A stretch of 64,000 nucleotides of DNA, from the NCBI RefSeq assembly GCF_000143415.4, contig NW_003314332.1, forward strand, positions 682,001-746,000, written 5' to 3'. The first letter of the stretch is position 1. Each line of letters starts with the position of its first letter. Position numbers and translations under genes: made by a program. Below the pieces are notes generated by a model. The model was given only the letters and a program-made list of their open reading frames with translations. It was not told where the DNA came from and did not search any database. Positions 51,516 through 52,862 of this stretch are shown here, piece by piece. The DNA is from Selaginella moellendorffii. Taxonomy: Eukaryota > Plantae > Lycopodiophyta.

Positions 51516-52862
51516 ATGGCGACTGAGGGCTTGGTCGCCGCAGGGGCTAGTGCAGCATTGGGAGCTCTTCGAGGAGATCTTCGAGGAACAGCCGACCTTC
51601 TGATCAAGCTTGCTTGTGCTGCTCGCAACAGCATAGGCAGATGCCAGGCGATGGCAGACAAGGTGAACATGGTTACCACCGCCCTCGAGAGCAGATCATA
51701 CAGGTACGACGATGTCAACCTTCAGGCTAATCTAGAAAAGCTGCTAGTTGTGATGAAAGACTGCGTGTGTCTTGTCGAGAAACACAGCAAGACGAGTGCG
51801 GTGAGCTTCTTCTTCTCGTGCCACGCTCTCACTGTTGACGAATTTGACGACCTCGACGCGCGCCTCAATCGCTGCATCAGCTGCTTGAATCTGAACTTCC
51901 ACATCTCCTCGTATGATTGCAGTCATGAGCACAAAGACGAGATCATAGCCCATATACAGGCCAACACAGCACGAACAGCACGAACTATTGAGGAGATAAA
52001 GCAGCTGGTCAAGGGCCAGGAGCCCGTAGAATATTTGACAGCCGTGCAGGGCGTTGTGACCGTGGGTGAAGCCTTGGCCGGGGACTACATGATATCTGCG
52101 ACGCTCACCGACAACAGCTCCTCAGTGTCACGGAAAGTCATCCTAGTGCAGTCACACGAGACAAAGAAGGAAGTTGCGATCCTGGAGAAACTAAGCCTTC
52201 ACGAGTGCATACTTGAGTTTCTTGGCATCTTTCCATATGGTGAGTCCAAGCCTTATCTTGTCTTTGAGAGGCCCTCCGAGGAAATGACAACATTGGACGA
52301 ACTGATCAATAAGAACCCGGGGAGTTTTATGAGTGACTGGAGAGTAAAGAGACAGATCGCTCTGGAGCTGGCAAGAGGTATGAGAGACTCTCATCTGGCC
52401 GGTGTGGTCCACAAGAATTTCCGCAGCTCCAACATATTTCTTAGCGGTGACCTTCAGCACGCTAAGATCTTTGGCTTCTACCAGGGAAGGATCAAGCTGG
52501 AGCCAAGTGCCAAGAAGTGGATGAACGACGAGCAAGTCCGCTGGGCTGCACCTGAGCAAGTTCAGAGACACCGACCTGCCTTTGATGAAAAGTGTGACAT
52601 CTACTCACTGGGAGTGGTGATTTGGGAGCTCATCACTGGGAACTTTCCTTTCGCCAAATACACTAACTACCGAAAACTTACCAGAGATCGGGACGAAAAT
52701 GTTGCCCTCTTGGATGACTTCCCTGTGGAATGCAAAGCAGGTGAACTGGGCAAGTTCAGCAGAATCTCTGAGCTCTGTAGAGATCCTCTGCCTGATAACA
52801 GACCATCTCTCGAGAACATTATCAATGATCTCCACAAGCTCCTTCCCGAAGAGATGATTTGA
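51516..52862 (+). CDS. MLKL-like protein: N-terminal four-helix bundle + pseudokinase, copy B, intact
   Basis: Helical N-terminus (AARNSIGRCQAMADKV...LEKLLVVMKDCVCLVEKH...FDDLDARLNRC); kinase fold with no GxGxxG, HKNFRSSNIFL for HRD, FGF for DFG, retained WAAPE and DIYSLGVVIWEL. Confidence 0.8.
   Translation: MATEGLVAAGASAALGALRGDLRGTADLLIKLACAARNSIGRCQAMADKVNMVTTALESRSYRYDDVNLQANLEKLLVVMKDCVCLVEKHSKTSAVSFFFSCHALTVDEFDDLDARLNRCISCLNLNFHISSYDCSHEHKDEIIAHIQANTARTARTIEEIKQLVKGQEPVEYLTAVQGVVTVGEALAGDYMISATLTDNSSSVSRKVILVQSHETKKEVAILEKLSLHECILEFLGIFPYGESKPYLVFERPSEEMTTLDELINKNPGSFMSDWRVKRQIALELARGMRDSHLAGVVHKNFRSSNIFLSGDLQHAKIFGFYQGRIKLEPSAKKWMNDEQVRWAAPEQVQRHRPAFDEKCDIYSLGVVIWELITGNFPFAKYTNYRKLTRDRDENVALLDDFPVECKAGELGKFSRISELCRDPLPDNRPSLENIINDLHKLLPEEMI

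What the first reader, a model, noticed from the sequence alone, without database searches (positions are those of the whole stretch)
51516..52862. Compact MLKL-like pseudokinase with animal-MLKL-like motif degeneration
Seen: 448 aa, helical N-terminal domain, brace-like helices, and a pseudokinase with HKNFRSSNIFL and KIFGF. Known: human MLKL has HGKIRSSNFLV and a GFE motif; described plant MLKLs come from seed plants and are longer. Inference: an independent or ancient MLKL-type lineage in a seed-free plant.
Basis: partly seen in the sequence, partly recalled or inferred. Interest (0 to 1): 0.75.

Follow-up and report, generated by a model that had tools for sequence, protein, structure and literature searches.

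The report
Spikemoss MLKL-like dead-kinase gene
This expressed Selaginella gene encodes a compact protein built like the animal cell-death executioner MLKL, and it belongs to an apparently undescribed family found in liverworts, clubmosses and ferns; what it does is untested.

Summary
Window 51516-52862(+) is an intact, intron-less 448-codon ORF in Selaginella moellendorffii. Contigs from four studies cover it as an unspliced mRNA of about 1.5 kb.

It has an MLKL layout: a helical N-domain, a linker helix, and a TKL-type kinase fold. The kinase fold has HKN for HRD and GFY for DFG.

On its own, the N-domain reaches Pfam MLKL_N only below threshold. Full-length relatives (33-40% identity) exist in Pteridium, Riccia, Diphasiastrum, in Selaginella paralogs, and in unnamed metagenome or transcriptome contigs.
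- 13 of 15 family members hit MLKL_N (best E 1e-11).
- The family N-domain profile hits human and mouse MLKL four-helix bundles at about E 1e-7.
- The full-length profile aligns colinearly with mouse MLKL (E 1e-31).

The family is not the seed-plant DUF1221-type MLKL. No seed-plant member ranked near it. In my sample its dead kinase groups, with moderate support, with MLKL_N-linked kinase-like domains of arbuscular-mycorrhizal fungi.

RefSeq names the gene "HT1" and splices out a bundle helix; the RNA contigs do not support that intron.

Function is inferred only: a regulated, self-associating, membrane-acting death or immune protein.

This scan had already noted other MLKL-like genes on other DNA of the same genome.

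The parts
51516..52862 (+). Coding sequence of the MLKL-like protein (448 aa plus stop), single exon
   Evidence: ORF list and translation. The exact protein is on record in NCBI/UniRef. RNA contigs run through it without gaps or mismatches.
51453..52943 (+). Minimum extent of the mRNA: 5'UTR of at least 63 nt and 3'UTR of at least 81 nt
   Evidence: Run X1 has one 1491-nt contig covering 51453-52943. Runs X5, X6 and X12 (three other studies) have contigs covering 51494-52919, 51583-52942 and 51557-52891. All have 0 differences and 0 gaps, and there is no coverage of the flanks. The same runs show a GT-AG intron joint in the neighbouring gene, so they are RNA.
51516..51890 (+). N-terminal helical domain (residues 1-125), MLKL_N / four-helix-bundle type with a short lid helix
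   Evidence: Pfam MLKL_N gives E 0.00097 and 19 bits (gathering score 27) for this protein, matching residues 42-130 to profile positions 24-114. 13 of 15 family members hit MLKL_N, best E 1e-11. The family profile hits human and mouse MLKL 4HB chains at 1e-7 to 6e-7, with the next hit at 0.2. Language-model neighbours are all MLKL_N/MCAfunc/RPW8 clusters, which is a lead only.
51891..52040 (+). Linker ('brace') region (residues 126-175) with one long predicted helix at 138-167
   Evidence: AF2 model, low pLDDT. The predicted self-association interface spans residues about 115-168.
52041..52859 (+). TKL-type pseudokinase domain (residues 176-448)
52410..52442 (+). Catalytic-loop remnant HKNFRSSNIFL: the HRD Asp is replaced by Asn
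   Evidence: The family reads H[KR][NKS] at this place, so no member has the Asp.
52473..52481 (+). GFY in place of DFG: the Mg-binding Asp is replaced by Gly (G320 is invariant in the family)
   Evidence: Alignments to BRAF and MLKL. Family alignment.
52137..52148 (+). VILV, the family's counterpart of the VAIK motif, with no conserved beta-3 Lys
   Evidence: Family alignment. This protein has K207 two residues upstream, which phmmer placed against BRAF's VAVK Lys, but K207 is not conserved in the family.
52506..52508 (+). Ser331 in the activation segment, invariant in all 15 family members; a candidate phospho-switch (inference)
   Evidence: Invariant columns R325, S331, K333, Q340, R342, W343, P346 and E347. 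The profile alignment places it beside the Ser-rich activation loop of mouse MLKL. The loop has pLDDT below 50 in the model.
51704..51787 (+). 84-nt GT..AG 'intron' of RefSeq model XP_024515694.1, which removes residues 63-90 (bundle helix alpha-3); not supported
   Evidence: The comparison with P0222 shows a 28-residue gap. RNA contigs from four studies run through the segment. The removed segment holds the family-invariant residues V79 and D82.
51477..51504 (+). Two overlapping tiny upstream ORFs (6 and 4 codons) in the 5'UTR
   Evidence: they lie inside the contig of run X1.
48606..49478 (+). Truncated, frameshifted tandem copy of the gene (residues 1-126, 129-246, then 351-399); it lacks the HKN/GFY core
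   Evidence: tblastn and the sequence itself. It is annotated as SELMODRAFT_425067. It is 97.9% identical to the other haplotype's gene. No RNA contig covers it in four runs.

Best explanation
The gene encodes a compact MLKL-type protein. An N-terminal four-helix-bundle domain (MLKL_N type, residues about 1-125) is joined by a helical linker (about 126-175) to a catalytically dead TKL kinase fold (176-448). It belongs to a conserved family of seed-free land plants. This architecture and its homology to MLKL are shown. The mechanism is inferred by analogy with animal MLKL and Arabidopsis MLKLs. In the resting state the pseudokinase and linker hold the helical bundle in check. A signal then releases it; the likeliest signal is phosphorylation of, or binding to, the strongly conserved activation segment around Ser331 by a kinase not yet identified. 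The protein then self-associates through the linker helices, and the bundle acts on a membrane as a pore or cation channel, giving cell death or an immune signal. I put about 0.9 on the MLKL-type architecture and family membership, and about 0.45 on the membrane-acting death/immune mechanism.
For: Architecture:
- Pfam finds a kinase domain plus a sub-threshold MLKL_N hit in register.
- 13 of 15 family members hit MLKL_N, best E 1e-11.
- The N-domain family profile finds only MLKL 4HB chains in the PDB at 1e-7 to 6e-7; the next hit is at 0.2.
- The full-length profile aligns positions 25-442 with residues 15-460 of mouse MLKL 4btf in one stretch, E 1.3e-31, ahead of all kinase-only chains.
- Foldseek's top hit for the AF2 model (pLDDT 66.7, pTM 0.66) is 4btf over 449 columns.
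- A chordate MLKL cluster is among the nearest Atlas shapes.

Dead kinase:
- The HRD Asp, the DFG Asp and a conserved beta-3 Lys are absent in every family member, while the fold, the alpha-C Glu and APE are kept.

Constraint and expression:
- 56 columns are invariant across liverwort, lycophyte and fern members, including most of the activation segment.
- The ORF is intact in both haplotypes.
- Unspliced mRNA contigs are present in four studies.

Self-association:
- Four copies of residues 1-185 scored ipSAE 0.78, against 0.00 for the best of 3 controls.
- That mark was reached by 21 of 30 proteins solved as pairs of one chain and by 0 of 23 solved as single chains. These counts hold only roughly here, because the calibration used two copies.
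- The runs agree in at least 86% of contacts, and the partner's pLDDT is at least 72.
- The interface spans residues about 115-168.
- The pass may come from the model's memory of solved MLKL-like assemblies.

Precedent: the HeLo domain plus brace of AtMLKL1 and AtMLKL3 kills cells, and an activation-loop phosphomimic enhances AtMLKL1 activity (10.1101/681015).
Against: - No functional data exist.
- This protein's own N-domain is the most diverged in the family: 19-29% identity to the others, and only 19 bits against MLKL_N's gathering score of 27.
- The N-domain is about charge-neutral rather than basic.
- The N-domain and linker are modelled with only moderate to low confidence, and I could not fold the N-domain alone.
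- dN/dS between the two haplotype alleles is 0.66 (6 synonymous and 14 non-synonymous differences), which fits relaxed or diversifying selection but rests on few sites.
- No candidate activating kinase lies next to the gene.
- Arabidopsis MLKL immunity can be separated from cell death.
Confidence: 0.6

Rival explanations
1. It has the same MLKL-like architecture, but it acts as a non-lethal signalling or scaffold protein, for example a cytoskeleton- or membrane-associated immune regulator, rather than a killer.
For: [quoted passage not shown] The N-domain here is not basic. The transcript appears in runs from eight studies, four of which I laid on the window, with no sign that expression is harmful.
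Against: The bundle-linker-pseudokinase layout and the predicted linker-mediated self-association are those of the executioner form. Resting MLKLs are also expressed constitutively, so expression does not argue against a killer.
Confidence: 0.2
2. It is a pseudokinase decoy or guardee. Pathogen effectors that target kinases bind or modify it, and another immune receptor monitors its state.
For: It is a dead kinase with a strongly conserved activation segment. The allelic dN/dS of 0.66 and the nearby truncated duplicate suggest a fast-evolving locus. Cereal kinase-fusion resistance proteins, including the 4HB-kinase Pm13, work in immunity.
Against: No NLR gene lies beside it in the window; the neighbours are a Trx-Grx gene, PPR genes and retrotransposons. 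The family is conserved at 33-40% identity across very distant plant lineages, which is unlike typical rapidly turning-over decoys.
Confidence: 0.1
3. It is a lineage-specific copy drifting under relaxed constraint, with little or no remaining function.
For: It has the most diverged N-domain of the family and has lost the first Cys of the family's K-x-C-K-x-K-C motif. It sits on the longest terminal branch in the family. dN/dS is 0.66. A broken copy lies 2 kb upstream.
Against: The full-length ORF is intact in both haplotypes. The mRNA is assembled in four independent studies with no differences from the window. All 56 family-invariant residues are by definition present in this protein.
Confidence: 0.08
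4. The RefSeq reading is right: it is an active Raf-like kinase of the HT1 type.
For: The RefSeq name of XP_024515694.1. The kinase fold is closest in shape to BRAF and CTR1.
Against: It lacks the HRD Asp and the DFG Asp, and the family lacks the beta-3 Lys. It carries an MLKL_N-type N-domain. The RefSeq model removes a bundle helix through an intron that the RNA contigs do not show.
Confidence: 0.02

Closest known systems
Vertebrate MLKL (necroptosis executioner; PDB 4btf, 2msv, 6d74)
   Same: The order and size match: a four-helix bundle with lid helix, a helical linker and a C-terminal pseudokinase, about 450-470 aa with no tail. The same two catalytic positions are lost in the same way: HKN and GFY here, HRN and GFE in mouse. 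The N-domain profile matches at E about 1e-7, and the full-length colinear match has E 1e-31.
   Different: Foldseek reports only 18% identity to mouse MLKL over the full-length structural alignment. The family has no conserved beta-3 Lys. The N-domain is not basic. No RIPK3/RHIM partner was seen in this window. Vertebrate MLKL did not rank among the 150 best database hits, so orthology is not shown.
Seed-plant MLKLs of the DUF1221 type (AtMLKL1-3; PDB 6KA4)
   Same: They are plant proteins with a HeLo/4HB domain, a brace and a pseudokinase, with roles in immunity and cell death (10.1101/681015).
   Different: No DUF1221 (PF06760) hit appears in this protein or in any of 15 family members. No Arabidopsis chain is among the N-domain profile's PDB hits at E up to 10. 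There is no serine-rich C-terminal extension. Only one linker helix is predicted, against five brace helices in AtMLKL3. NLRtracker, which keys on PF06760, reports none in Selaginella.
Angiosperm MLKL_NTD-kinase proteins (Pm13, R3AK type)
   Same: An N-terminal MLKL_NTD/4HB domain that is not DUF1221, joined by a brace to a kinase domain (PMC10951266; 10.64898/2026.08.07.743466).
   Different: Pm13 keeps all catalytic residues, whereas this family is uniformly dead. No seed-plant protein scored near the family in the exhaustive search. I could not place the two on one tree.
MLKL_N-linked kinase-like domains of Glomeromycotina (Diversispora, Funneliformis, Acaulospora, Rhizophagus) and of an oomycete (Lagenidium)
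   Same: They have an N-domain that matches the family profile (22-60 bits) followed by a TKL kinase-like domain, often with a degenerate DFG (NF[NKR] or G-L-S). The four glomeromycotan domains are the sister group of the plant family in my kinase trees, with SH-like support of 93 and SH-aLRT of 87. Mucoromycota clusters, including a 410-aa whole-length match, are the nearest Atlas shapes.
   Different: Most are long multi-kinase or repeat-bearing proteins. They keep the HRD-type Asp (HHD or HRD). The plant family sits on a long stem, so the grouping is only moderately supported.

Membership tests
MLKL-type 4HB-pseudokinase proteins (architecture class defined by vertebrate MLKL) | N-terminal four-helix-bundle domain (Pfam MLKL_N, PF22215) | tested here: met
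   This protein alone is sub-threshold (19.1 bits, gathering score 27, E 0.00097). At family level the feature is met: 13 of 15 members hit MLKL_N, best E 1e-11. The N-domain profile hits human and mouse MLKL 4HB at 1e-7 to 6e-7, and the next hit is at 0.2.
MLKL-type 4HB-pseudokinase proteins (architecture class defined by vertebrate MLKL) | Helical brace between the bundle and the kinase fold that mediates oligomerisation | tested here: inconclusive
   One long helix at 138-167 is predicted at pLDDT 36-46. The tetramer prediction scored 0.78 against 0.00 for the best control, with the interface at residues 115-168; this may come from the model's memory of solved relatives.
MLKL-type 4HB-pseudokinase proteins (architecture class defined by vertebrate MLKL) | C-terminal kinase fold that lacks catalytic residues (pseudokinase) | tested here: met
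MLKL-type 4HB-pseudokinase proteins (architecture class defined by vertebrate MLKL) | Colinear full-length similarity to MLKL | tested here: met
   4btf at E 1.3e-31, profile positions 25-442 against residues 15-460. Foldseek's top hit is 4btf over 449 columns.
MLKL-type 4HB-pseudokinase proteins (architecture class defined by vertebrate MLKL) | Orthology with vertebrate MLKL (common descent of the whole gene) | tested here: inconclusive
   Vertebrate MLKL is not among the 150 best hits. The family's kinase-like domain groups with glomeromycotan domains within that sample. No tree with vertebrate sequences could be built, because none was available by reference.
MLKL-type 4HB-pseudokinase proteins (architecture class defined by vertebrate MLKL) | Activation by an upstream kinase, and membrane permeabilisation or cell death | not testable with these tools
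   Needs expression, ion-leakage, liposome and phosphorylation assays.
Seed-plant MLKL (AtMLKL1-3, DUF1221 type) | DUF1221 (PF06760) HeLo domain | tested here: not met
   No PF06760 hit for the N-domain at E up to 10, nor in any of 15 family members at E up to 0.01.
Seed-plant MLKL (AtMLKL1-3, DUF1221 type) | Serine-rich extension after the pseudokinase | tested here: not met
   The pseudokinase match runs to within a few residues of the C-terminus at residue 448. The feature itself is described in 10.1101/681015.
Angiosperm MLKL_NTD-kinase (Pm13 type) | MLKL_NTD domain joined to a kinase that keeps all catalytic residues | tested here: not met
   The N-domain type fits, but the kinase is dead. 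Pm13 is reported to keep all catalytic residues (PMC10951266).
HT1 / Raf-like MAPKKK (RefSeq name) | Active TKL kinase with HRD, DFG and VAIK Lys | tested here: not met

The most novel reading that the evidence does not exclude
Seed-free land plants keep an animal-style, compact MLKL death switch that seed plants lost or replaced with the DUF1221 type. Its closest relatives are MLKL_N-kinase modules of arbuscular-mycorrhizal fungi. The family would then be either a relic of a pan-eukaryotic MLKL progenitor, or the product of an ancient gene exchange between early land plants and their glomeromycotan symbionts.
Probability: 0.15. Interest if true: 0.85.

Novelty: new member of a known kind. Interest (0 to 1): 0.6.

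Why it matters
MLKL-type executioners are described in vertebrates and in seed plants. In seed plants there are two types: the DUF1221 type, and in angiosperms the Pm13-type 4HB-kinases.

This family fills the gap in liverworts, lycophytes and ferns. Its form resembles animal MLKL in length, layout and motif loss more than the described seed-plant MLKLs do. Standard pipelines miss it, because NLRtracker keys on DUF1221 and RefSeq calls it HT1 and cuts out a bundle helix.

It offers three things:
- a small, intron-less, expressed test case for asking whether 4HB-pseudokinase death switches are ancestral in land plants;
- a way to ask what activates such a switch in an organism with no known RIPK3-like activator;
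- a test of whether the link to arbuscular-mycorrhizal fungal kinases reflects shared descent or gene transfer.

Tried and rejected
- **AlphaFold2 without an alignment** gave an unusable model (pLDDT 33) and cost one of two jobs, so the N-domain could not be folded alone.
- **The word-index protein searches** (whole protein, N-domain region, family alignment) were swamped by kinases. They found only the allele and two close metagenome relatives. The family came from the exhaustive search.
- **phmmer of the single N-domain against the PDB** gave only chance-level adenovirus IIIa hits (E at least 0.05).
- **The VIA-align second look** tested only the kinase domain, residues 174-448. The Atlas shape search also mostly reflects the kinase domain.
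- **The findings search by sequence** was blank.
- **The 983-aa kinase-plus-ankyrin ORF at 32813-35764(-)** was considered as a RIPK-like partner and rejected. Its kinase is STE20/AMPK-like by PDB search, and it lies 16 kb away beyond retrotransposons.
- **Whether 6KA4 is in the PDB copy searched** was not verified independently.
- **The organisms behind P0052, P0201, P0214 and P0053** (JGI, ENA and Logan contigs) were not identified.
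Full report
**What is in the window.** An uninterrupted ORF runs from the ATG at 51516 to the stop at 52862 on the + strand, 448 codons. The genome is Selaginella moellendorffii. A 445-aa protein that is 97-98% identical (SELMODRAFT_428198, scaffold GL377664.1) is the other haplotype's allele. From 51486 to 58000 the window is colinear with that scaffold at 94.7% identity. The exact 448-aa protein is already on record in NCBI and UniRef.

**Expression and gene model.** Twenty public runs from eight studies hold the stretch. I laid the contigs of four runs from four studies on 48300-53800. Each run has one contig over the gene, at 51453-52943, 51494-52919, 51583-52942 and 51557-52891. 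All have no differences and no gaps, and nothing covers the flanks. In three of these runs, contigs of the neighbouring thioredoxin-glutaredoxin gene on the minus strand skip 50534-50882. The ends of the skipped stretch read CT..AC on the + strand, which is a GT-AG intron on the minus strand. The runs are therefore RNA, although the records only guess so. The gene is thus transcribed as an unspliced mRNA of about 1.5 kb. RefSeq's model XP_024515694.1, named 'serine/threonine-protein kinase HT1', is 420 aa because it removes 51704-51787 as an intron, which deletes residues 63-90. The four contigs do not show this splice. The removed segment holds residues that are invariant in the family. The 448-aa product is therefore the better model.

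**Domains.** Pfam finds a protein-kinase domain (Pkinase 1.2e-22, PK_Tyr_Ser-Thr 2.9e-21). It also gives a sub-threshold MLKL_N hit, which for residues 1-190 alone reaches E 0.00097 and 19.1 bits against a gathering score of 27, matching residues 42-130 to profile positions 24-114. By phmmer the best solved relative is an MLKL pseudokinase chain (6vbz, 1.2e-14), tied with B-Raf. The single N-domain finds nothing real in the PDB. Language-model neighbours of residues 1-185 are all MLKL_N, MCAfunc or RPW8 clusters with scores of 0.83-0.87, which is only a lead.

**The family.** The exhaustive HMMER search of 1.84 billion representatives found full-length relatives at 33-40% identity. By their source records they come from:
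- the fern Pteridium aquilinum;
- the liverwort Riccia sorocarpa;
- the lycophyte Diphasiastrum complanatum, with two adjacent loci;
- two further S. moellendorffii proteins, named 'TMKL1' and 'GCN2-like' by RefSeq;
- unnamed JGI, ENA and Logan contigs.

On the metagenome contigs the gene was called as a single open ORF. No seed-plant protein appears among the full-length family hits. After the family, scores drop to long multi-kinase proteins of fungi, amoebae and oomycetes. The 15-sequence alignment has 56 invariant columns.

**Is the N-domain an MLKL-type bundle?**
- At family level, 13 of 15 members hit Pfam MLKL_N, best E 1e-11. The two others are N-terminally truncated contigs.
- A profile of the 12 N-domains searched against all PDB sequences finds only human and mouse MLKL four-helix-bundle chains at 1e-7 to 6e-7 (6d74, 6zle, 2msv, 4btf and others). 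The next hit is at 0.2, and no Arabidopsis MLKL chain is listed at E up to 10.
- The full-length profile puts full-length mouse MLKL first (4btf, E 1.3e-31). It is aligned in one stretch from profile position 25 to 442 against residues 15-460, ahead of every kinase-only chain.
- With the family alignment, AlphaFold2 gives a model with pLDDT 66.7 and pTM 0.66. It has helices at 2-19, 22-35, 40-59, 67-92, a short one at 95-101, and 103-123. By my reading this is the helix order of the MLKL bundle with its lid helix. A long helix follows at 138-167, and a confident kinase fold starts at about 176.
- Foldseek's top PDB hit is 4btf over 449 columns. The TM-score is low (0.42-0.45) because the domains sit differently.
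The structural evidence for the bundle is therefore indirect.
- This protein's N-domain is the most diverged of the family, at 19-29% identity, and the first Cys of the family's K-x-C-K-x-K-C motif is lost.

**Self-association.** Four copies of residues 1-185 scored ipSAE 0.78, against 0.00 for the best of three controls. That mark was reached by 21 of 30 proteins solved as pairs of one chain and by 0 of 23 solved as single chains. These counts hold only roughly here, because the calibration used two copies. The runs agree in at least 86% of contacts, and the partner's pLDDT is at least 72. The interface lies along residues about 115-168, which is the end of the last bundle helix plus the linker helix. 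The model supports binding but does not show it, and the pass may be from memory of solved MLKL-like assemblies.

**Relation to known plant MLKLs.**
- Mahdi et al. described plant MLKLs as conserved across seed plants, with a serine-rich tail. Their link to animal MLKL needed profile-profile comparison (10.1101/681015).
- The N-domain of those proteins is Pfam DUF1221 (PMC10951266; PMC8559963).
- Neither this protein nor any family member hits DUF1221, and the protein ends with the kinase fold.
- NLRtracker defines 'MLKL' by DUF1221. In the supplementary table of Chia et al. it reports none in Selaginella or Diphasiastrum, but a few DUF1221-kinase proteins in Sphagnum, Azolla and Salvinia (PMC11218826).
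- Angiosperms also hold many MLKL_NTD-kinase proteins that are not DUF1221, such as Pm13, which keeps its catalytic residues, and R3AK.
- Searches of the held paper library for MLKL together with Selaginella, Marchantia or lycophyte found no description of this family. Subscription journals are largely missing from that library.

**Nearest non-plant relatives.** Among the 150 best hits, eleven non-family proteins also carry a domain that matches the family's N-domain profile. By their records they are from Glomeromycotina (Diversispora, Funneliformis, Acaulospora, Rhizophagus), the oomycete Lagenidium, and unnamed contigs. Several have degenerate DFG motifs.

In a FastTree of 242 kinase-like domains the plant family is one clade with support of 100, on a long stem. 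It sits next to four glomeromycotan N-domain-linked domains with SH-like support of 93. An IQ-TREE run with a mixture model on 59 rows gives the same sister grouping with SH-aLRT 87, which is moderate support. The nearest Atlas shapes are also mostly Mucoromycota kinase clusters, including a 410-aa whole-length match, followed by chordate MLKL. The sample holds only the query's best hits and lacks vertebrate and seed-plant MLKLs. It therefore shows who is near, not the root.

**Locus.**
- A truncated copy lies at 48606-49478(+). It covers residues 1-126, has a frameshift, continues to 246, then jumps to 351-399 and lacks the catalytic-loop core.
- The copy is annotated as SELMODRAFT_425067.
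- It is closer to the other haplotype's gene (97.9%) than to the intact gene beside it (about 94%).
- No RNA contig covers it in the four runs.
- The two alleles of the intact gene differ by 6 synonymous and 14 non-synonymous changes plus a 3-codon indel, giving dN/dS 0.66 on few sites.
- The neighbours are a Trx-Grx gene, PPR and PPR-DYW genes and Ty3-type retrotransposon ORFs. There is no NLR and no adjacent kinase.

**Verdict.** The interpretation, an MLKL-type lineage in a seed-free plant, is supported and extended to a conserved family in liverworts, lycophytes and ferns. It is a new member of a known kind: the 4HB-linker-pseudokinase design of MLKL. It is distinct from both described plant classes, and current annotation overlooks it. 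The proposed mechanism is an auto-inhibited bundle that is released through the activation segment, self-associates through the linker and acts on membranes. This is inferred from homologues and one passing complex prediction, and nothing about its function has been tested.

Earlier reports of this scan noted other MLKL-like genes on other pieces of this genome. I did not map the paralogs found here onto those reports.

Noticed in passing
window 48606-49478 (+): A truncated, frameshifted tandem copy of the MLKL-like gene, annotated as hypothetical protein SELMODRAFT_425067. It is 97.9% identical to the other haplotype's gene but only about 94% identical to the intact copy 2 kb away, which hints at gene conversion or an inter-haplotype rearrangement. 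No RNA contigs cover it.
   Followed up: partly
window 51704-51787 (+): RefSeq model XP_024515694.1 ('HT1') removes this 84-nt GT..AG stretch as an intron, which deletes a conserved helix of the N-domain. RNA contigs from four studies keep it.
   Followed up: yes
window 51477-51504 (+): Two overlapping tiny upstream ORFs (6 and 4 codons) lie in the 5'UTR of the MLKL-like mRNA.
   Followed up: no
window 49481-51072 (-): A thioredoxin-glutaredoxin gene is transcribed divergently from the MLKL-like gene. Its intron 50534-50882 is confirmed by RNA joints. The contigs differ from the window at about 10 sites and by a 12-nt insertion, so they seem to come from the other allele.
   Followed up: partly
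window 32813-35764 (-): A 983-aa ORF has an N-terminal kinase domain (STE20/AMPK-like by PDB search) and C-terminal ankyrin repeats. To my knowledge this is the reverse of the usual order in plant ankyrin-repeat kinases.
   Followed up: partly
window 53000-54400: A very AT-rich block (19-29% GC) starts right after the 3'UTR, in a window that is otherwise at 42-59% GC.
   Followed up: no
L008 4759-5073 (-) (other haplotype, GL377664.1): A 105-aa kinase-domain fragment is annotated on the opposite strand about 1 kb upstream of the allele. The arrangement of partial copies differs between the two haplotypes.
   Followed up: no
proteins P0065, P0141, P0073, P0177, P0171 (Glomeromycotina), P0154 (Lagenidium): Fungal and oomycete proteins carry one to three MLKL_N-like domains, each followed by a kinase-like domain, often with a degenerate DFG. 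The Atlas shape search also points to large Mucoromycota kinase-Sel1 clusters. This recalls the kinase-SEL1 and MLKL-SEL1 genes that earlier reports of this scan noted in Selaginella.
   Followed up: partly
window 40316-44705 (+): Ty3/chromovirus-type retrotransposon ORFs (gag-protease, RT-RNase H-integrase) lie between the kinase-ankyrin gene and the MLKL-like locus.
   Followed up: no
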